Assembly: GCF_022045235.1 (NCBI RefSeq)
Contig: NW_027266266.1
Coordinates: 28,024,001-28,088,000, forward strand
Source of the DNA: Haliotis cracherodii
Lineage: Eukaryota
Reading direction: 5' to 3'
Length of the DNA stretch: 64,000 bases
In this document: positions 46,672-62,200 of the stretch, one piece after another
Layout: each line of letters opens with the position of its first letter
How positions within the stretch are numbered: the first letter of the stretch is position 1
Position numbers and translations under genes: made by a program
The notes under the pieces: model-generated
Told to the model about the DNA's origin: nothing
Seen by the model: only the letters and a program-made list of their open reading frames with translations
Databases searched by the model: none

Positions 46672-47639
46672 TTATTACGAGATCACCCGTTTAATATACA
46701 TACAGCTGTATTACACATTATGTAATACCAAAAACGCACTGTCGGAACAAGTTTCCGAACAAATATAGAAAGCTCTCAACATGGCTTGGCTTATTCAACG
46801 ACATTGCGTGTGGAGATGATAAATACTGAGAGGAGCTTATGCACGCCCAATGACTCCAGCAACCTTGTTGCTAGGCTGACGTCACATGGCATTGTTTCGC
46901 CGATGGATCTTGCAACAAAATTCCACAAATTACGTCATCGGGTGTTGTGAAGTGATTGTAAACTTTGCGGTTCAGAGCCTCGTTCCACAAGAAGATCGTA
47001 CTGTAGTATGGGAAGCCGTTTTCACATTTATTAAGGAATAACAGATATCTTCAATTGTTTTAAAGATATCAATAATGTTTTTAAGATATCAAAACATAAT
47101 TAAAGATATCTTAAATTCATTTCTGATATCCATAATACAATTACTGATATCTTAACATGTTACGGTGATATCAACAAATTAGTTTGTGATATCTCTAAAT
47201 GTATTTAAGATATCATTAAACATTTACCATCCTACAGTACATAAATATATAAGAAAAAAATTCAAGATATCTTAAATTCAATTCAAGATATTTTGAAATA
47301 AGTTATCCATATCCACAAATGCATTACAGATATCTTTAATTCAATTAGAGATATCTTTAATTCAATTACAGATATCTTTAATTCAATTAGAGATATCTTT
47401 AATTCAATTCAAGATATCATTAATTCTGACCGTTACTAACATCAAAAATCCATTAAGTCCATGTTAAAGTATGTGAGGTGCGATACCCTTAGCACTACGA
47501 TAACTTTGTGGAACGGACGCCTGAATTCTGAAGGTGGACCGTTCTATAAGTACCTTTCAACGTGTTTGAAGTATTATTCTGTTATACTCAATATTATGCC
47601 GTGGATCGTGTAGGTGTAGGTGTCAGCCTATTCACACAC

Positions 47640-47640
<1 letters not shown>
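46672..47640 (-). mobile_element. Second, inverted copy of the hairpin-headed non-coding element, interrupted
   Basis: 46672-47020 and 47455-47640 are reverse-complement homologues of 61610-61975 and 61420-61600. Confidence 0.85.
47025..47455. repeat. GATATC-rich ~21-22-bp repeat insertion
   Basis: Periodic gatatc motifs (e.g. gatatctttaattcaattaca); absent from the other copy of the host element. Confidence 0.75.

Positions 47641-47642
<2 letters not shown>

Positions 47643-47718
<76 letters not shown>
47643..47718. repeat. (AT)n microsatellite
   Basis: About 38 AT units. Confidence 0.98.
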
Positions 47719-47720
<2 letters not shown>

Positions 47721-48478
47721 CACTTGGTTGTTCACGCGGATCATTCATTTGGCTGGAGTGGCATCGATCGTAACTGACACAATATTAAGTAATATCGTTG
47801 GTCGATAGGTTCAGCGGCGAACATGGCGATGTAATATGAATCCCATGACATTATTCTTCATCTATTATTCTTTTGTATTGCTGGTAATATATATATGTTA
47901 CAGGAAACAAGTATAATCAGTGATTAAGTCTAATGACTGAAAATTTCAGTAATTATGTCTAATAACTGATTCACTCGGTGGTTATGTCTAATTACTGAAA
48001 TCTTCAGTAATTAAACATAATCACTAAAATGAACCAAGGGATTTTATATTTGTTTACTGAAAGCATATCCCTGCCTTGTTTTTATAATGTGTGCTAGTTT
48101 TGAAATTAGATTAGCTATCAAAGTAAATACAACCTCCTGTAACCAGATACCTTACACAAAAATCACAGAAATAAGCTTAAACAGTTCAATCTTTTATTTC
48201 ATAAAATGGTATGACGTGAATGGTATGACATGTATGGTATGACAAACAGCAGTCAGATGGACATTCAGGAATGTTTGTTTGCACATGAAAGACTTGAATG
48301 ACATCTAGAATTACATTGCATCTCAGGTCTTGTATGAAAGTAACCAAGCTGCACGTCACTAACCCATGAGCCTACACTCTGCCGACCTATGTTTGAGGTG
48401 TCACACATCTATCTAAATTTATCTAATTATATTATGTCCACTTTTCCACATAGACGAACTTATTGGTCGTTCATTAGA

Positions 48479-49966: not shown

Positions 49967-51184
49967 TGTGTTCGCCGTGTTTGTTTCACAGGCGTCCATG
50001 TGTTCGCCGTGTTTGTTCCACAGGCGTCCTTGTGTTGGCCGCATTTGTTTCACAGGCGTCCATGTGTTCGCCGTGTTTGTTTCACAAGCGTCCTTGTGTT
50101 CGCCGTGTTTGTTCCACAGGCGTCCATGTGTTCGCCGTGTTTGTTTCACAGGCGTCCTTGTGTTCCCCGTGTTTGTTTCATAGGCGTCCTTGTGTTCCCC
50201 ATGTTTGTTTCACAGGCGTCTTTGTGTTCGCCGTGTTTGTTCCACAGGCGTCTTTGTGTTCGCGGTGTTTGTTTCACATGAGCCCATGTGTTCGCCGTGT
50301 TTGTTTCACAGGCGTCCTTGTGTTCCCCGTGTTTGTTTCACAGGCGTCTTTGTGTTGGCCGCGTTTGTTTCACAGGCGTCCATGTGTTCGCCGTGTTTGT
50401 TTCACAGGCGTCCTTGTGTTCGCCGTGTTTGTTTCACAGGCGTCCTTGTGTTCCCCGTGTTTGTTTCATAGGCGTCCTTGTGTTCCCCGTGTTTGTTTCA
50501 CAGGCGTCCTTGTGTTCGCCGTGTTTGTTCCACAGGCGTCTTTGTGTTCGCGGTGTTTGTTTCACATGCGCCCATGTGTTCGCCGTGTTTGTTTCACAGG
50601 CGTCCTTGTGTTCCCCGTGTTTGTTTCACAGGCGTCTTTGTGTTGGCCGCGTTTGTTTCACAGGCGTCCATGTGTTCGCCGTGTTTGTTTCACAGGCGTC
50701 CTTGTGTTCCCCGTGTTTGTTTCACAGGCGTCTTTGTGTTCGCCGTGTTTGTTTCACAGGCGTCCTTGTGTTCCCCATGTTTGTTTCACAGGCGTCTTTG
50801 TGTTCGCCGTGTTTGTTCCACAGGCGTCTTTGTGTTCGCGGTGTTTGTTTCACCAGCGCCCATGTGTTCGCCGTGTTTGTTTCACAGGCGTCCTTGTGTT
50901 CCCCGTGTTTGTTTCACAGGTGTCTTTGTGTTCGCCGTGTTTGTTCCACAGGCGTCTTTGTGTTCGCCGTGTTTGTTTCACAGGCGTCTTTGTGTTCGCG
51001 GTATGTGTTTCACAAGCGTCTTTGTGTTCGCGGTGTTTGTTTCATGGGCGTCTTTGTGTTCGCGGTGTTTGTTTCACAGGCGTCTTTGTGTTCGCGGTGT
51101 TTGTTTCACAGGCGTCTTTGTGTTCGCGGTGTTTGTTCCACAGGCGTCTTTGTGTTCGCGGTGTTTGTTTCATGGGCGTCCTTG
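49967..51184. repeat. 32-bp minisatellite
   Basis: tgtgttcgccgtgtttgtttcacaggcgtcct repeated about 38 times; stop-free in all three plus frames. Confidence 0.97.
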
Positions 51185-52163
51185 ACTACATGCACGCAAA
51201 GACATTGCTTCCTTTCCAAAGGAAACAGTTACACTGAAGCACTTCAAATACATATAAGCGACTTTTATAACTGTTAGTTGATGCATAGTTTCTGAGCTCT
51301 GTGTAGCACACGAGCATCTTCCCGGTCTGCACGATGTAGCACAATGTTTGTATGCATAACGTCAATGTTCGAAATGTACATGGGAGGGCAAGCCAGACAG
51401 GAAGCACGCTGCTGTGGCCGCTAGGAGATTGTTCCAGTGTCTTGTAAGCTGTGCTCATAGCCCTGGCAGTAATGGGTGGGGGTAATGTTGTTCGCAGGAC
51501 ATGATGGTGCAGAGTTCATAATGCTGCTAATTAACTGTTCATTGTGTGTAATTATAACCCTGCTGACACCTGTTTTAAACAATATTTATTTCCAGTTGGT
51601 ACAATGAAAGGGGATTGATAAACAGACAGAGCCAAAATGAATACCTCTCCCGATCTGGGCCGCATCCTGTCTGTACACAGATTGTCTTTTAGTCTACGCT
51701 AAACGGAGTCAAATCCGCGTTTTCGACGTTAATCACCATCGTGACGCCTACCTTGGCAGTCCTTTACAACACACATGGTACATGCACATGTTAGAAAAAT
51801 GAATGACCTTAATAGGATGATTGTACAGGATATTTGGTAATTAATATACTATGTAAAGTATGTGTTTTATTCCCATATTGAATTATATCTGCTGTACATA
51901 TAACCTTCTTCAAAACTGTACATACAGTTAGTTTGGAATCTGGAAGATCTGATTAATCAATGTGGTCTTATATTTCAATTGTCTACTTACAATGTAATGA
52001 TTATACTATTGCTTAACTGATAGTATTGAATTAGTATCTGATGTTAGTAATACCTAGATATAAAATTCATTGACTAATTTAGGTATTGGAGCGGCACAAG
52101 TTTTGAAAAGGCAAATAGTTCAGTAAGAGCAGAAAAGTTATATATTTTCAACATACGTTTATA

Positions 52164-57199: not shown

Positions 57200-58430
57200 T
57201 TCCCAGGGTGTTGTTGTGCTCCAACAGAATATCTTTGAGTATCTCCCCAGGGTGTTTCGGTGCCCCAAGAGGAGATTTCTGAGTATCTCCCCGGGGTGTT
57301 TCGGTGCCCCAACAGGAAATTTCTGAGTATCTCCCCAAGGGTGTTTCGGTGCTCCAAGAGGAGATTTCTGAGTATCTCCCCGGGGTGTTTCGGTGCTCCA
57401 ACAGGAGATCTCTGAGTGTCTCCCCAGGGCGTTATGGTGCTCCAAGAGGAGATCTCCGAGTGTCTCCCCAGGGTGTTTCGGTGCTCCAAGAGGAGATTTC
57501 TGAGTGTCTCCCAAGGGTGTTATGGTGCTCCAAGAGGAGATCTCTGAGTGTCTCCCCAGGGTGTTTCTGTGCTCCAAGAGGAGATTTCTGAGTGTCTCCC
57601 CGGGGTGTTTCGGTGCTCCAAGAGGAGATTTCTGAGTGTCTCCCCAAGGTGTTATGGTGCTTCAAGAGGAGATATCTGAGTGTCTCCCAAGGGTCTTATG
57701 GTGCTTAAAGAGGAGATCTCTGAGTGTCGCCCAAGGGCGTTATGGTGCTCCAAGAGGAGATCTCTGAGTATCGCCCAAGGGTGTTACGGTGCTACAATGG
57801 GTGATTTCTTAGTGTCTTCCAGGGTGTTACGGTGCTCCAAGAGGAGATTTCTGAGTGTCTCCCAAGGGTGTTTCGGTGCTACAATGGGATATTTCAGAGT
57901 GTCTCCCCAGGGTGTTTCGGTGCTCCAAGAGGAGATTTCTGAGTGTCTCCCAAGTGTTTCGAGGCTCCAAGATGAGATCTCTGACTGTCTCCCCAGGGTG
58001 TTTCGGTGCTCCAAGAGGAGATTTCTGAGTGTCTCCCAAGGGTGTTACGGTGCTACAAGGGGAGATTTCAGATTGTCTCCCAAGTGTGTTTCGAGGCTCC
58101 AAGATGACATCTCTGATTGTCTCACTAGGGTGTTATGGCGCTCCGAGAGGATATCTCTAAGTGTCTCCCAAGGGTGTTTCGGTGCTCCAAGAGGAATTTT
58201 CTGAGTGTCTCCCAAGGGTGTTTCGGTGCTCCAAGAGGACATTTCTGAGTGTCTCCCAAGGGTCTTATGGCGCTCCAAGCGGAGATCGCTGATTGTCTTC
58301 CCTGGGTGTTATGGCGCTCCGAGAGGCGATCTCTAAGTGTCTCCCAAGGGTGTTTCGGTGCTCCAAGAGGAAATTGTCTGAGTGTCTCCAAAGGGTGTTT
58401 CGGTGCTCCAAAAGAGATGTCTGAATGTCT
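57200..58430. repeat. 44-bp minisatellite
   Basis: ccccagggtgtttcggtgctccaagaggagatttctgagtgtct repeated about 28 times. Confidence 0.95.
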
Positions 58431-60043
58431 CCCTAGGGTGGTCTATTTGTCCAAGAAGAGATGTCTGAGCATCTCCCCAGGGTGGTCCAAGAGGAGATGT
58501 CTGAGTGTCTCCCTAGGGTGGTCTATTTGTCCAAGAAGGAGATGTCTGAGCATCTCCCCAGGGTGGTCCAAGAGGAGATGTCTGAGTGTCTCCCCAGGAT
58601 GGTCTATTTGTCCAAGAAGGAGATGTCTGAGCATCTCCCCAGGGTGGTCCAAGAGGAGATGTCTGCATGAGTGTCTCCCCAGGGTGGTCCAAGAGGAGAT
58701 GTCTGAGCATCTCCCCAGGGTGGTCCAAGTAGAGATGTCTGCATGAATGTCTCCCCAGGGTGGTCCAAGGGTAGATGTCTGAGTGTCTCCCCAGGGTGGT
58801 CCAAGGGTAGATGTCTGAGTGTCTCCCCAGGGTGGTCCAAGAGGAGGTGTCTGAGCATCTCCCCAGGGTGGTCCAAGAAGAGATGTCTTAGTGTCTCCCC
58901 AGGGTGGTCCAAGAGGAGATGTCTGCATGAGTGTCTCCCCAGGGTGGTCCGAGAGGAGATGTCTGAGTGTCTCCCCAGGGTGGTCCAAGAGGAGATGTCT
59001 GCATGAGTGTCTCCCCAGGGAGGTCCAAGAGGAGATGTCCGAGTGTCTCCCCAGGGTGGTCCAAGAGGAGATGTCTGCATGAGTGTCTCCCCAGGGTGGT
59101 CCAAGAGGAGATGTCTGAGTGTCTCCCCAGGGTGGTCCAAGAGGAGATGTCTGAGCAACCTCCCGAGGGTGGTCCAAGAGGAGATGTCTTAGTGTCTCCC
59201 CAGGGTGGTCCAAGAGGAGATGTCTGAGTGTCTCCCCAGGGTGGTCCAAGGGTTGATGTCTGAGTGTCTCCCCAGGGTGGTCCAAGAGGAGATGTCTGAG
59301 CGTCTCCCCAGGGTGGTCCGAGAGGAGATGTCTTAGTGTCTCCCCAGGGTGGTCTATTTGTCAAAGAGGAGATGTCTGATTCTCTCCCAAGGGGCTCCAA
59401 GATAAAATGTCTGAGTGTCTCCCCGGGTGGTCCAAGATTAGATGTCTGAGTGTCTCCCCAGAGTGGGGTGGTCTGAGAGGAGATGTCTGAGTGTCTCCCA
59501 AGGATGGGGTGGTCCGAGAGGAGATATCTTAGTGTCTCCCCAGGGTGGTCTATTTGTCCAAGAGGAGATGTCTGATTCTCTCCCAAGGGGCTCCAAGATG
59601 AAATGTCTGAGTGTCTCCCCAGGGTGGTCCAAGAGGAGATGTCTGAGTGTCTCCCCAGGGTGGTCCAAGAAGAGATGTCTGAGTGTCTCCCCAGGGTGGT
59701 TCAAGAGGAGATGTCTGAGTGTCTCCCCAGGGTGGTCCAAGGGTAGATGTCTGAGTGTCTCCCCAGGGTGGTCCAAGAGGAGATGTCTTAGTGTCTCCTC
59801 GGATGGTCCAAGAGGAGATGCCTGAGCGTCTCCCCAGGGTGGTCCAAGAGGAGATGTCTGAGTGTCTCCCCAGGGTGGGGTGGTCCAAGAGGAGATGTCT
59901 GAGTGTCTCCCCAGGGTGGTCCGAGAGGAGATGTCTGAGTGTCTCCCCAGGGTGGTCCAAGAGGAGATGCCTGAGCGTCTCCCCAGGGTGGTCCAAGAGG
60001 AGATGTCTGAGTGTCTCCCCAGGGTGGTCCAAGAAGAGATATC
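58431..60043. repeat. 36-bp minisatellite (related to the 44-mer)
   Basis: ccccagggtggtccaagaggagatgtctgagtgtct repeated about 42 times, with 40-46-bp insertion variants. Confidence 0.95.
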
Positions 60044-61229
60044 TATTTACAATGCATTAAGATGTCGTAAAAACATTCAACGTGTTGAGATTTTTCAGAC
60101 CTGTATATGTCTCTTGATTTCTATTATGAAAACACGTTGCAGTAACGTTGATACTGAGATATTGTATACAATGTTACCCCAGCCCCCAAAAAACAATTTT
60201 AACGGAAATTGCTGATTGAGATATGGTGGTAGATTATGTTAAAGTAGTGGATGAGTGGGATAACTGCAACAAGCATAAGGCAAGCGTGGGTTTCTCTACC
60301 CTGGTCTTCACGGGTTGTCATTGCTCACTGACCGTAAACTGCGGCTTATTTCCACCATTTCTATGTGGGGAAAAGCCGTGATAAAAAACTTTTGTCGTTA
60401 TAAGAGGATTTTAGCATGCGTGGTTGAGATATGCATTAGTAATTTAAAGACTGAGGACAATGTACAGTTCATTATTGACTGCCCTTAGAACTCTCATCAT
60501 ATTCATTAAATCCTCAGTATCATGTTGAGTATGAGAGAACCACTTGTGTAATTGCCATATCATAGCAGGCCGTAAGAGTAATAGCTATTCATTTATTTAT
60601 CTTCCTTCTATTCCCGTTTTTCAGTTCAGTTCTCAATGTGAGTAATAGAAACAGTAATTCCTTTCAAAACGATGCTTCAATAACGTTACTCGAACATTCA
60701 TCAAAATGTCTGCATTTAACACATATGTCATGCAGTATTGAACATTCGGATTGCTATTGCAAAGTGTTTTTATTTTATTAACAGTTCCAATATCTCGTAA
60801 CTGCATGTAGGTTCAAATCCTTCAATATTGCTACTGTATTGTATTTCACGATCCTAAATATATATACACGGTATACCATAGTGCACTTAATATATGTTTT
60901 CCGATCACCTGAACACATAGATGAACATGATCACAAGTCAAATAGGGAATTGCATCGGGCATGATAATGGTCATTTTTTTAATTAAATTTCCACTGCATA
61001 AAACATTTTGAAAGCTTTGTTAAGGCCTTGAATGTTGTAACCCTGGTCAAACAACTTTTGAGCAAGACTCGTATGACGCTCTTTGAAATATTCAAGAGAG
61101 ATTGGACCTGAGGAAGACTGGAGCTGCTGTAATATTGCTCCACATAAAGGGAGAGTTGACTATTGGAAAGTTACTTTGTCACTTTAATTTTTTTTTTTGC
61201 ATAAATCTAAATATGAATCAGATATATAG

Positions 61230-61976
61230 AATACTAAACGAGCTCCCGTGTAATACCAATTTTATGAAACGAGTGAATAGTTGTGGTATCTGACGAGCGA
61301 AAGCGAGTCAGATACCACAACTATTCACGAGTTTCATAAAATTGGTTTTACACGGGAGCGAGTTTAGTATTTTATTTATTACTTGCAATTTATAACGTTT
61401 TTTTAATTATACTGTTGAGTGTGAATAGGCTGATACCTATATGATCCATGACGTAGTCCAACTGAGTTTAACAGAATAATACTTCAAACACGTCAAAAGT
61501 TGAAACGTAATAATGTCATACCATACAACGGGTCTACCTTTAGAATTCACAAAATTATCGTAGGGCTAAGACTTTCGCATCTCACATACTTTAACTTAGA
61601 CCAACGACTGTCGTTGCGCTACAATACGATCGTCTTGTGGAACGGGCCTTGCACCTCCAAGTTTTCAATAACGTCACAATACCCGATGACGTAATTTGTG
61701 GAGTTTTGATGCAAGATCCATCGGCGAAACAATGCCATGTGACGTCAGCCTAGCAACAAGGTTGCTGGGGTCATCGAGTGTGCATAAGCTCCTCTCAGTG
61801 ATCTATCAACTCCACACGCAATGTCGTTGAATAAGCCAAGCGATGTTGAGAGCTTTCAATATTTGTTCGTGAAACGTGTTCCGAGAGTACATAAGCACAC
61901 GTTTTGGTATTACACAATGTGTAATAAAGCTGTATGTTTATTAAACGGGTGATCTCTTCACGGGCAAGTAATAAAA
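61230..61976 (+). mobile_element. Non-coding dispersed element headed by a 142-nt hairpin (unclassified non-autonomous DNA element)
   Basis: Hairpin 61230-61371; inverted repeat ttattacttgc (61376-61386) / gcaagtaataa (61965-61975); body homologous to 46672-47640. Confidence 0.8.
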
Positions 61977-62114
61977 GGCGGTATCTCTGGTCTCTCTATT
62001 ATTAGTTCAGGTGGGTAAATGTGTGTAGTATGCGACTATGTGAAATAAGTGGGAAATATATCCCCATACGTGCGGGAGAGCATACTTGTCTGACGACTTG
62101 TCCGCCAGTAATAT

Positions 62115-62200
62115 TACTTGTCACGGAGGAGGACACCAGAAATGGGCTTCACACATTGTACCCATGTCGGAAATCGAACCTGGGTAATCGGCGTGACGAA
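62115..62200 (-). mobile_element. SINE family A fragment
   Basis: ggacaccagaaatgggcttcacacattgtacccatgtcggaaatcgaacctggg. Confidence 0.8.

What the first reader, a model, noticed from the sequence alone, without database searches (positions are those of the whole stretch)
61230..61371. 142-nt hairpin built with three tandem sheared-GA motifs and a GCGAAAGC cap: a strand-specific single-stranded structure
Seen: 69-nt arms pair perfectly except for one T-T mismatch and three sites where both arms read 5'-CGAG-3' (61239-42/61359-62, 61270-73/61328-31, 61294-97/61304-07); the apex is GC-GAAA-GC. Known: CGAG/CGAG forms tandem sheared G.A pairs that are very stable in DNA, and d(GCGAAAGC) is an extraordinarily stable DNA mini-hairpin. 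The opposite strand would instead have destabilising TC/TC mismatches. Inference: three identical non-Watson-Crick motifs are unlikely to be random decay of a palindrome. This suggests selection for folding of one strand only, as expected for an element mobilised through a single-stranded or hairpin intermediate (tyrosine-recombinase Crypton-like, HUH/Helentron-like, or an unclassified mechanism). CGAG could alternatively be a repeated protein-binding site.
Basis: partly seen in the sequence, partly recalled or inferred. Interest (0 to 1): 0.75.

Follow-up and report, generated by a model that had tools for sequence, protein, structure and literature searches.

The report
Helentron transposon end hairpin with CGAG blocks
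The hairpin is the end signal of a short, protein-less rolling-circle transposon (Helentron type) present in hundreds of copies, and its three odd CGAG-opposite-CGAG spots are kept across related families, so they probably tell the transposon's enzyme which strand or arm is which.

Summary
The hairpin (61230-61371) is one end of a 752-bp non-coding repeat (61224-61975). The repeat has 12-nt inverted repeats, the long stem-loop outside one of them, no target-site duplication and tandem copies. That is the architecture of non-autonomous Helentron/HLE2 rolling-circle transposons.

The genome holds at least 31 Helitron-type Rep matches. One autonomous group carries a comparable 143-nt hairpin 8-9 kb downstream of Rep in 4 of 4 copies.

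The apex CGAGCGAAAGCGAG occurs 854 times, against 9 for a reversed control. Four hairpin families have stems only 32-82% alike, yet each pairs 86-100% internally and keeps CGAG opposite CGAG at 22 of 24 motif positions.

New here:
- Single-arm GA-to-TC conversions, whole-arm conversions and inverted apexes show that the arms template each other. Even so, 75 of 81 intact copies keep one polarity.
- By analogy with the autonomous copies, the G.A strand is the bottom strand, not the strand Helitrons are known to peel off.

"Helentron-like" is supported. No autonomous partner was found, and function is inferred.

This scan had already noted the same motif on other DNA of this genome (s1-826189).

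The parts
61224..61975 (-). One copy (752 bp) of a non-coding, high-copy repeat, read as a non-autonomous Helentron/HLE2 element. The top strand is inferred to be the window's minus strand, so the hairpin lies at the 3' end.
   Evidence: Similarity among 29 of 30 fetched copies starts just left of the hairpin and ends at ...GCAAGTAATAA(A), with lengths of 657-764 bp. Contigs of run X1 break off at 61220-61224 and at 61974-61975. No ORF or protein match was sought, because the body is short and varies between families.
61230..61371 (.). 142-nt terminal hairpin with 69-nt arms and a GAAA loop. The palindrome continues more loosely to 61222-61379.
61239..61242 (+). Outer CGAG on the left arm, opposite 61359-61362.
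   Evidence: This is the least constrained site. It is Watson-Crick (one arm CTCG) in 4 of 43 intact F1 copies and in the F2 family consensus.
61270..61273 (+). Middle CGAG on the left arm, opposite 61328-61331, in the extended context (A/C)ACGAGT(G/T).
   Evidence: It is kept in families F1, F2, F3 and F4.
61294..61297 (+). Inner CGAG on the left arm, opposite 61304-61307.
   Evidence: 854 exact apex matches in the genome against 9 for the control.
61297..61304 (+). GCGAAAGC cap (mini-hairpin sequence). It reads GCTTTCGC on the minus strand.
   Evidence: Stability data come from PMC13037366. Family F3 has GCTTGC here instead, so the cap is not universal.
61304..61307 (+). Inner CGAG on the right arm.
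61328..61331 (+). Middle CGAG on the right arm.
61359..61362 (+). Outer CGAG on the right arm.
61254..61254 (+). T of the T.T mismatch (partner 61347). It is specific to family F1 and is Watson-Crick in F2.
61375..61386 (+). Subterminal inverted repeat TTTATTACTTGC, immediately inside the hairpin.
   Evidence: I6: 12 nt, 100% complementary to 61964-61975.
61964..61975 (+). Terminal inverted repeat GCAAGTAATAAA, the other end of the element. It is the 5' end on the inferred top strand.
61224..61229 (+). Terminal ATATAG outside the paired stem. ATAT is kept in 34-36 of 36 unbiased F1 copies, and the base before it varies.
61908..61926 (.). Short internal palindrome TATTACAC-AAT-GTGTAATA near the other end. 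It repeats the start of the inverted repeat (TATTAC; the full TTTATTAC starts at 61906), like the 'IR complementary to the subTIR' of HINEs.
   Evidence: (I5). The HINE description is from PMC7492417. This resemblance was read by eye only.

Best explanation
The hairpin is the terminal stem-loop (right terminal sequence) of a non-autonomous Helentron/HLE2 rolling-circle transposon.

Shown:
- It is the end of a 752-bp repeat with 12-nt inverted repeats and the stem-loop outside one of them.
- The repeat has no target-site duplication and forms tandem and nested copies.
- The genome has hundreds of copies, and it also carries long-ORF Helitron-type Rep genes whose own 3' ends bear a hairpin of the same size.
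- The hairpin, not the body, is what different families share.
- The opposed CGAG/CGAG sites are kept while the stems between them are replaced by compensating changes.
- The arms sometimes copy or invert each other, yet one polarity dominates.

Inferred:
- The transposase (an HUH nuclease plus helicase supplied in trans) uses the stem-loop as its end or termination signal.
- The CGAG blocks, together with the non-palindromic cap, break the two-fold symmetry of an otherwise perfect palindrome. The two strands and the two arms therefore differ. One strand can fold with three sheared G.A blocks and a GCGAAAGC mini-hairpin. Its complement has three open T.C/C.T bubbles and a weak pyrimidine loop.
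- By analogy with this genome's autonomous copies and with Helraiser, the peeled-off top strand would carry the pyrimidine bubbles, and the bottom strand would carry the very stable G.A fold.

I think the marks most likely direct strand or arm choice at cleavage or termination. This could work, for example, through a locked bottom-strand hairpin that keeps the top-strand end single-stranded. I cannot show which fold is the functional one.
For: Architecture:
- The 12-nt TIRs are perfect, and the stem-loop lies beyond one of them.
- Boundaries come from 29 of 30 copies and from run X1 contigs.
- No TSD appears at any tested boundary: at most 5 of 29 copies for 2-mers and 0 of 29 for 4-mers.
- Tandem or nested copies occur in L017, L018, L022 and L030.
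- This matches the canonical HLE2 description: 12-16-nt TIRs with a stem-loop after the right repeat (PMC11417382 passages; HINE in PMC7492417 passages).

Genome context:
- There are 31 PF14214 matches, with open frames up to 3207 aa.
- The 143-nt hairpin of L063 with its flanks occurs full-length at exactly 4 places. Each lies 8.4-9 kb downstream of a Rep match on the same strand.
- That hairpin alone gives 3538 first-look candidates.

Copy number: 1979 first-look candidates, with all 40 scored copies 99-100% identical, and 854 exact apexes against 9 for the control.

Conservation with covariation:
- Stems are 86-100% paired within F1, F2, F3 and F4, but the stem segments are only 32-82% alike between families.
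- CGAG holds at 22 of 24 motif positions.
- In an unbiased sample, the hairpin is 98.1% (median) identical to the window copy, against 88.9% for the adjacent 36 nt of body (26 copies).

Arm-to-arm templating:
- GA-to-TC changes on one arm only occur in 4 of 43 intact F1 copies.
- Whole-arm replacement occurs in L160 and L165.
- Inverted apex or interior occurs in L113, L132, L078 and L151.
- Polarity is kept in 75 of 81 intact copies, and it is the same in F3.

Physical asymmetry in print: the CGAG block solved by NMR, and GCGAAAGC at 76.5 C against GCTTTTGC at 33 C.

A working precedent exists for a stem mismatch that lets an HUH nuclease use only one side of a palindrome: the MVM GA/GAA bubble (PMC1185569 passages).
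Against: - No autonomous element carrying a CGAG-type hairpin or this family's TIR was found. Held Rep loci do not match the element. No listed apex on contigs C1 or C2 lies within 12 kb of a Rep match. Two guessed 3' regions were empty.
- The one autonomous hairpin seen (L063) has no clean CGAG/CTCG pairs, and no TIR partner for it was found in 10 kb upstream.
- T^T insertion could not be proved. The pattern fits only if the terminal T's are assigned to the target.
- Orientation rests on analogy. An 'HLE2-reverse' layout with a 5' stem-loop exists in fungi and oomycetes.
- The families share a roughly 30-nt apex module, so part of the motif conservation could be common descent.
- Wobble-versus-A.C mismatches at family level favour neither strand (3 against 3 by my reading).
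- The DNA folding model gives nearly equal energies for the two strands.
- No experiment on any Helentron end was found in the papers I saw.
Confidence: 0.75

Rival explanations
1. The G.A strand itself is the single-stranded intermediate. The three sheared G.A blocks and the GCGAAAGC cap would be selected to make that one strand fold, for example as a landmark on the excised single strand or as a priming site for second-strand synthesis.
For: - Two independently known, very stable single-strand DNA motifs sit on the same strand, and both are in print.
- Mini-hairpin sequences are reported at single-strand phage origins (PMC13037366 passages).
- The polarity is the same in F1, F2, F3 and F4.
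Against: - In 4 of 4 autonomous copies the long hairpin is at the 3' end of the coding strand. On the corresponding strand of this element the motifs read CTCG.
- Helraiser uses the top strand.
- F3 lacks the GAAA cap.
- The folding model shows only a 1.5 kcal/mol difference.
Confidence: 0.25
2. CGAG, more fully (A/C)ACGAGT, is a double-strand binding site. Six same-direction iterons would load the Rep protein in one orientation, and the mismatches in the folded form would be a by-product.
For: - The motif context extends beyond 4 nt at the middle site in all four families.
- Spacing is regular: 24-26 and 25-32 nt.
- A second conserved block, GGTATCTGA/TCAGATACC, recurs in F1, F2 and F4.
- Rep proteins of the HUH class commonly bind direct repeats beside their nick site. 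That is my own knowledge and was not checked here.
Against: - Binding sites on duplex DNA would not need to sit exactly opposite each other on the two arms in every family.
- The outer site is dispensable as a mismatch (F2 consensus; 4 of 43 F1 copies).
- No protein data exist.
Confidence: 0.2
3. The motif has no function of its own. All families would descend from one hairpin that happened to have these mismatches, and the motif simply has not yet decayed.
For: - The families share the apex module and the terminal AGAAT/ATTTT flanks, so they are related.
- Inserted copies do decay at the CpG of CGAG, giving CAAG or TGAG variants.
Against: - Stem segments have turned over to 32-82% identity with compensation, while 22 of 24 motif positions are unchanged.
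- Unpaired sites that contain a CpG should change faster, not slower.
- Arm-to-arm conversion visibly erases the mismatches in single copies, yet family consensuses keep them.
Confidence: 0.1
4. The hairpin acts as RNA, as a long hairpin transcript processed into small RNAs, or it belongs to another transposon class (foldback or MITE of a cut-and-paste family, or Crypton).
For: - As RNA the fold is very stable.
- Rfam gives sub-threshold matches to generic long miRNA-precursor models on both strands (best 55.9 bits against a gathering score of 94).
Against: - No Rfam family reaches its threshold.
- In three small-RNA runs, 0 reads lay on the hairpin. X19 and X21 had 0 reads on the whole stretch, so they are no test. 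X20 had 12 reads, all in the body.
- No TSD argues against cut-and-paste families.
- A hairpin at one end only, plus TIRs, fits HLE2 and not the Crypton layout.
Confidence: 0.05

Closest known systems
HINE / non-autonomous Helentron (HLE2, Helitron2), e.g. Cg_HINE of the Pacific oyster and DINE-1 of Drosophila
   Same: Both have 11-12-nt (sub)terminal inverted repeats, a palindrome after the right repeat, no coding capacity, high copy number and tandem arrangements, and both occur in a mollusc-type repeat landscape (PMC7492417 and PMC11417382 passages; window data).
   Different: Published HINE palindromes are described as short, within a 60-bp right flank. This one is 142-158 nt and carries conserved CGAG/CGAG blocks. 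No microsatellite or satellite array lies in this copy. No autonomous partner was identified here.
Helitron (HLE1), with Helraiser as the tested example
   Same: Both are rolling-circle-type elements without a TSD. A 3' hairpin acts as terminator, and one (top) strand is active (PMC5876387 passages).
   Different: The ends here are not 5'-TC / CTRR-3' on either strand. TIRs are present. The hairpin is about ten times longer and sits at the very end.
Mismatched GA/GAA 'bubble' in the left-end hairpin of minute virus of mice
   Same: A small purine mismatch in the stem of a long palindrome makes the two arms unequal, so that an HUH nuclease-helicase (NS1) nicks only one side (PMC1185569 passages).
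   Different: That is a virus with rolling-hairpin replication, a single asymmetric doublet/triplet and a Y-shaped hairpin. Here there are three symmetric 2x2 blocks in a transposon, and the resemblance is in logic only.
'CGAG block' and GCGAAAGC mini-hairpin DNA motifs
   Same: The sequence requirement is identical: 5'-CGAG-3' opposite 5'-CGAG-3' between Watson-Crick pairs, and GCGAAAGC at the tip (PMC10085684 and PMC13037366 passages).
   Different: Those motifs were characterised in oligonucleotides from a human promoter and from phage origins. Their occurrence as spaced, conserved elements of a transposon end hairpin did not turn up in my searches.

Membership tests
Helentron / HLE2 (non-autonomous: HINE) | Short inverted repeats (about 11-18 nt), one terminal and one subterminal | tested here: met
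   61375-61386 against 61964-61975 is 12 nt and 100% complementary. The same ends appear in 29 of 30 copies.
Helentron / HLE2 (non-autonomous: HINE) | Stem-loop or palindrome after the right inverted repeat, at the 3' end | tested here: met
   The stem-loop lies directly outside one TIR at the element's end. That this end is the 3' end is inferred from autonomous copies. The length of 142 nt is far above the 'short palindrome' of the description.
Helentron / HLE2 (non-autonomous: HINE) | No target-site duplication | tested here: met
   At six boundary choices, at most 5 of 29 copies share a flanking 2-mer, at most 3 of 29 a 3-mer, and 0 of 29 a 4-mer.
Helentron / HLE2 (non-autonomous: HINE) | Insertion between T and T | tested here: inconclusive
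   On the inferred top strand, the base at the TIR end is T in 24 of 29 copies. The last base at the hairpin end is T in 35 of 36. This fits T^T only if both T's belong to the target. No empty site was available. The flank shows a longer preference, ATA-N before the end.
Helentron / HLE2 (non-autonomous: HINE) | An autonomous relative with Rep (HUH) and helicase that shares the ends | tested here: inconclusive
   Rep genes are present (31 PF14214 matches). One autonomous group has a 143-nt 3' hairpin that is shared with thousands of short elements. No autonomous copy with the CGAG-type hairpin or this TIR was found.
Helitron (HLE1) | 5'-TC start, CTRR-3' end, insertion between A and T | tested here: not met
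   The + strand starts ATATAG and ends AATAAA. The minus strand starts TTTATTAC and ends CTATAT.
Cut-and-paste MITE / foldback element | Target-site duplication of fixed length flanking terminal inverted repeats | tested here: not met
   There is no TSD. The long palindrome is at one end only.
CGAG block (tandem sheared G.A) and GCGAAAGC mini-hairpin | 5'-CGAG-3' facing 5'-CGAG-3' between Watson-Crick pairs; GCGAAAGC at the tip | tested here: met
   The sequence requirement is met three times and once respectively. Actual formation of sheared pairs in this context is not testable with these tools. The folding model treats the sites as plain 2x2 loops.
Known RNA families (Rfam 15) | Score at or above the family's gathering threshold | tested here: not met
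   The best match is 55.9 bits against 94 (MIR1435). All 12 listed matches are below threshold.

The most novel reading that the evidence does not exclude
The CGAG blocks and mini-hairpin cap are a built-in strand-choice device of a Helentron lineage. They lock the bottom strand into an ultra-stable fold, or mark the only strand that the enzyme may process. If so, either HLE2 elements handle the strand opposite to the one used by Helitrons, or termination works through an asymmetric cruciform in which one arm is locked and the other is left open for the HUH nuclease. The single-arm GA-to-TC conversions and the flips would then be natural loss-of-function variants of this device.
Probability: 0.22. 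Interest if true: 0.75.

Novelty: new variant of a known kind. Interest (0 to 1): 0.48.

Why it matters
Nothing I saw in the papers says how Helentron (HLE2) transposases recognise their ends or choose a strand. All mechanistic data I found are for one Helitron, Helraiser.

A long end hairpin carries a conserved, well-characterised non-Watson-Crick motif that makes the two strands physically different. That gives a concrete, cheap handle for experiments:
- Flip the hairpin.
- Make the sites Watson-Crick.
- Swap the cap.
- Then ask what happens to cleavage, termination and strand use.

The natural conversions and flips seen here also show that the arms of such palindromes pair with each other in vivo.

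If the motif turns out to be only a lineage quirk, the finding is an ordinary high-copy Helentron with an unusually long hairpin.

Tried and rejected
Autonomous partner. I blasted the 752-bp element and searched its motifs in 36 Rep-centred or Rep-flanking loci and found nothing. I compared the 100 listed apex places with Rep coordinates on C1 and C2, and none lay within 12 kb. The other 754 apex places were not listed, so contigs beyond C2:50 Mb stayed unchecked. I fetched guessed 3' regions of two other Rep groups (L127, L128). Neither had a hairpin or a CGAG pair. I looked for an inverted copy of the sequence upstream of the L063 hairpin in 10 kb upstream of five Rep copies and found none.

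Strand test by wobble pairs. Family-level G.T against A.C mismatches are balanced, 3 against 3 by my reading, so they are uninformative. Within-family changes are mostly post-insertion decay and cannot show selection.

Empty-site test. Three F1 copies share one left-flank repeat, but their right flanks differ (two are alike; the third is the start of an F3-like hairpin). No clean filled-versus-empty pair was obtained. The nested copy in L018 suggested a 4-nt overlap that I could not interpret.

Hammerhead ribozyme. CTGACGAG...GAAA recalled the hammerhead core (recalled, not from a call). However, the third conserved element reads GAG and not GAA, the arms pair with each other, and Rfam gave no such match. 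I rejected this.

Small RNAs. Two of three runs laid nothing on the stretch, so they are no test.

MAFFT alignment of the four family hairpins was not symmetric enough for the count of structure pairs. I used motif-anchored segments instead.

Searches for prior description listed nothing on conserved mismatches in Helitron or Helentron hairpins:
- 'Helentron, hairpin, inverted repeat'
- 'sheared, tandem, mismatch, Helitron' (its hits use 'sheared' for DNA shearing)
- 'Helentron, abalone'
- 'Helentron, non-autonomous, oyster, stem-loop'
- 'Helentron, mismatch, stem'

I saw listings only, except for the papers cited as passages. Supplementary files, which hold the HINE and HELIANO end sequences, were not seen and might show similar motifs. 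The species name 'abalone' comes only from an earlier AI note, and I did not check it.
Full report

The sequence at 61230-61371 is as described. It has 69-nt arms and a GAAA loop inside GCGAAAGC (61297-61304). There is one T.T (61254/61347) and three places where both arms read CGAG. A looser palindrome reaches 61222-61379.

Either strand folds into the same shape. As DNA the energies are -63.8 and -62.3 kcal/mol, with z about -21 and 0 of 200 shuffles as good. As RNA they are -102.6 and -95.0. The generic energy model therefore sees hardly any strand difference. It has no terms for sheared G.A blocks or for the mini-hairpin cap.

2. WHAT IT BELONGS TO

The window is part of a 1.18-Gb, 80-contig eukaryotic assembly. 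An earlier AI note calls it an abalone, which I did not verify.

The hairpin gave 1979 first-look candidates, and all 40 scored were 99-100% identical. Aligning 30 copies with flanks showed that similarity begins just left of the hairpin and runs about 750 bp to the right, ending in GCAAGTAATAA(A). Contigs of an independent run break off at 61220-61224 and at 61974-61975. The element is therefore 61224-61975.

The 12 nt directly inside the hairpin (61375-61386) are a perfect inverted repeat of the far end (61964-61975). No target-site duplication is present at any of six boundary choices. Whole copies occur in tandem, head to head and nested.

This is the published architecture of HLE2/Helentron elements and of their non-autonomous HINE forms:
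- short inverted repeats
- a stem-loop after the right repeat
- no TSD
- insertion between T and T

The description comes from PMC11417382 and PMC7492417 (passages only).

The T^T rule is compatible but unproved. The bases at the two junctions are T on the inferred top strand in 24 of 29 and 35 of 36 copies, but they could belong to the element. The flank at the hairpin end shows a longer preference, ATA-N before the end. It resembles the element's own other end.

Helitron (HLE1) ends, TC...CTRR, are absent.

3. AUTONOMOUS RELATIVES AND ORIENTATION

The genome has 31 matches to the Helitron Rep domain PF14214, many inside open frames of 2600-3200 codons.

Ten kilobases downstream of one of them (L063) lies a 143-nt hairpin. 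That hairpin with its flanks occurs full-length at exactly four places. Each is 8.4-9 kb downstream of a Rep match on the same strand. The hairpin alone, ending within a few bases of the last pair, gave 3538 first-look candidates.

So in this genome a hairpin of this size is the 3' end signal of autonomous Helentrons, and it is the part that short elements share with them.

By analogy, the hairpin end of the window's element is its 3' end. The top strand is then the window's minus strand, and on that strand the motifs read CTCG/CTCG.

I did not find the autonomous partner of the CGAG-type hairpin. The L063 hairpin has no such motif, and I could not find a TIR partner for it. A reversed layout is known in fungi and oomycetes. 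The strand assignment is therefore an inference, to which I give roughly 70%.

4. IS THE MOTIF SELECTED?

The apex CGAGCGAAAGCGAG occurs 854 times, against 9 for the reversed control.

I fetched 98 of the first 100 listed places. Adding L010 gave 99 hairpins, a sample that is unbiased except for the 14-nt apex. One listed place, C2:9761371, was left out. Eighteen hairpins were truncated or under 88% identical and were set aside. The remaining 81 were intact: 43 F1 (the window's family), 22 F2 and 16 F4. A fourth family, F3, with cap GCTTGC, lies in L017. Further ones appear in L098 and L157.

Within each of the F1-F4 representatives, the stem segments are 86-100% paired. Between families, the same segments are only 32-82% alike, from 7 of 22 to 9 of 11 aligned columns.

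CGAG stands at 22 of the 24 motif positions. The exceptions are F2's outer left arm, which is CTCG and so makes a Watson-Crick site, and F3's outer right arm, which is CAAG, a CpG decay.

The native six-site pattern is intact in 23 of 43 F1, 20 of 22 F2 and 8 of 16 F4 copies. Most departures are single changes, often CAAG or TGAG.

In 26 F1 copies, the hairpin is 98.1% (median) identical to the window copy, against 88.9% for 36 nt of adjacent body.

Unpaired, CpG-containing sites that stay fixed while the paired stems around them are rewritten point to selection. The outer site is looser.

5. THE ARMS TALK TO EACH OTHER

Four of 43 intact F1 copies have GA changed to TC on one arm only, at the outer site. 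These are L068 on one arm and L070, L083 and L164 on the other. Set-aside copies L162 and L158 show the same kind of change.

With single-base change at these positions running at about 2%, an exact two-base complement switch is expected in far fewer than one copy of this sample. That estimate is my own arithmetic.

Other copies show larger exchanges between the arms:
- L160 and L165 have a whole arm replaced by the complement of the other.
- L113, and the set-aside L155, have only the apex inverted relative to the flanks.
- L132 has the inner two-thirds inverted.
- L078 (F2) has the whole interior inverted.
- L151 (F4) is a mosaic.

All of these are read.

These are what intrastrand pairing with mismatch correction, or recombination between the arms, would produce. 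They show that the palindrome does fold or exchange in vivo.

Yet only 6 of 81 intact copies have a flipped apex. All four families share one polarity: the G.A strand has the element's terminus at its 5' side. Erasing forces exist, and the asymmetry persists in the lineages that amplify.

6. MECHANISM

What is shown is an end stem-loop with conserved symmetry-breaking marks.

What is known from print:
- 5'-CGAG-3' facing 5'-CGAG-3' forms a 'CGAG block' of two sheared G:A pairs between G:C pairs (NMR; PMC10085684 passages).
- GCGAAAGC melts at 76.5 C, while GCTTTTGC melts at 33 C (PMC13037366 passages).
- In Helraiser, the hairpin is the terminator and only the plus or top strand forms and cleaves junctions (PMC5876387 passages).
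- In minute virus of mice, a GA/GAA mismatch in the hairpin stem decides which copy of the palindrome NS1, an HUH nuclease-helicase, can nick (PMC1185569 passages).

My inference is that the marks let the Helentron enzyme tell strands or arms apart on a palindrome that would otherwise look the same from both sides.

If the orientation inference is right, the peeled-off strand shows three pyrimidine bubbles and a weak loop. Its complement can lock into a very stable G.A-studded hairpin. That could hold the top-strand end single-stranded for the nuclease, or stall the following polymerase. This last step is speculation.

The rival views cannot be excluded:
- The G.A strand is itself the intermediate.
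- CGAG acts as a same-direction binding site on duplex DNA.

An RNA role has no support. Rfam gives only sub-threshold generic hairpin matches. Three small-RNA runs gave no read on the hairpin. Two of them laid nothing at all and are no test, and the third laid 12 reads, all in the body.

7. NOVELTY AND VERDICT

The element is a new member of a known kind. The 142-nt end hairpin with spaced, conserved CGAG blocks is a variant that I did not find described (searches; listings and passages only; supplements not seen).

This scan had already reported the same motif on other DNA of the same genome (s1-826189) and long-hairpin Helentrons there (s1-826206, s1-829581). I reached the Helentron reading before seeing those notes, and I confirmed the conservation independently.

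This report adds:
- the link to autonomous copies and the resulting strand assignment
- the unbiased tally of copies
- the conversion and flip variants
- the literature anchors

Interest is moderate. It is a good experimental handle on an unstudied transposase, not a new kind of system.

Noticed in passing
window 62100-62137: TATTACTTGTCACGGAGGAGGACACC is a 73%-complementary inverted repeat of the F1 element's end at 61948-61973. It looks like the start of another, diverged Helentron-type element facing the first.
   Followed up: no
window 61468-61497, minus strand: In small-RNA run X20, 12 reads lay on the element body. Most of them form a roughly 30-nt species on the minus strand, with 10 molecules beginning at 61497. 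None lay on the hairpin. This may be a piRNA-like product of the repeat family.
   Followed up: no
window 47030-47730: Imperfect palindromes rich in GATATC recur at about 300-nt spacing (47043-47152 and 47343-47425), next to a pure (AT)n tract at 47643-47714.
   Followed up: no
window 50001-52000 and 58001-60000: There are two composition outliers: AT skew of -0.389 at 50-52 kb, and GC of 0.553 with GC skew of +0.197 at 58-60 kb.
   Followed up: no
L062, L064, L065 (10 kb upstream of Rep in three autonomous copies): Long arrays of a roughly 290-bp tandem repeat lie upstream of the Rep open frames and are shared between copies at 86-97% identity. This resembles the satellite arrays carried by oyster Helentrons.
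   Followed up: partly
L067, L074, L101, L112, L124 (left flanks): Two different families, F1 and F2, sit at exactly the same position of another repeat, ...TGGGAGCCAGTT(T/A)(T/G)GATGATAAAT. Its end resembles the inverted-repeat side of the F3 family. The elements seem to land on each other's ends.
   Followed up: partly
L157 (G000:C2:39820300-39820520): A further hairpin family has two copies of the CGAGCGAAAGCGAG apex module 63 nt apart and additional ACGAGT motifs.
   Followed up: no
L022 706-1085: There is a 183-nt-arm inverted repeat with a 14-nt spacer. It consists of two F1 copies joined head to head at their inverted-repeat ends.
   Followed up: no
F1 copies in L068-L124: A large F1 subfamily carries an extra C.C mismatch in the inner stem (TTCTGG against TTGTGG). 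Another subfamily has a G-to-A change that creates a fourth CGAG on the right arm (CACGAGAGCGAG). Amplifying lineages evidently tolerate extra mismatches.
   Followed up: partly
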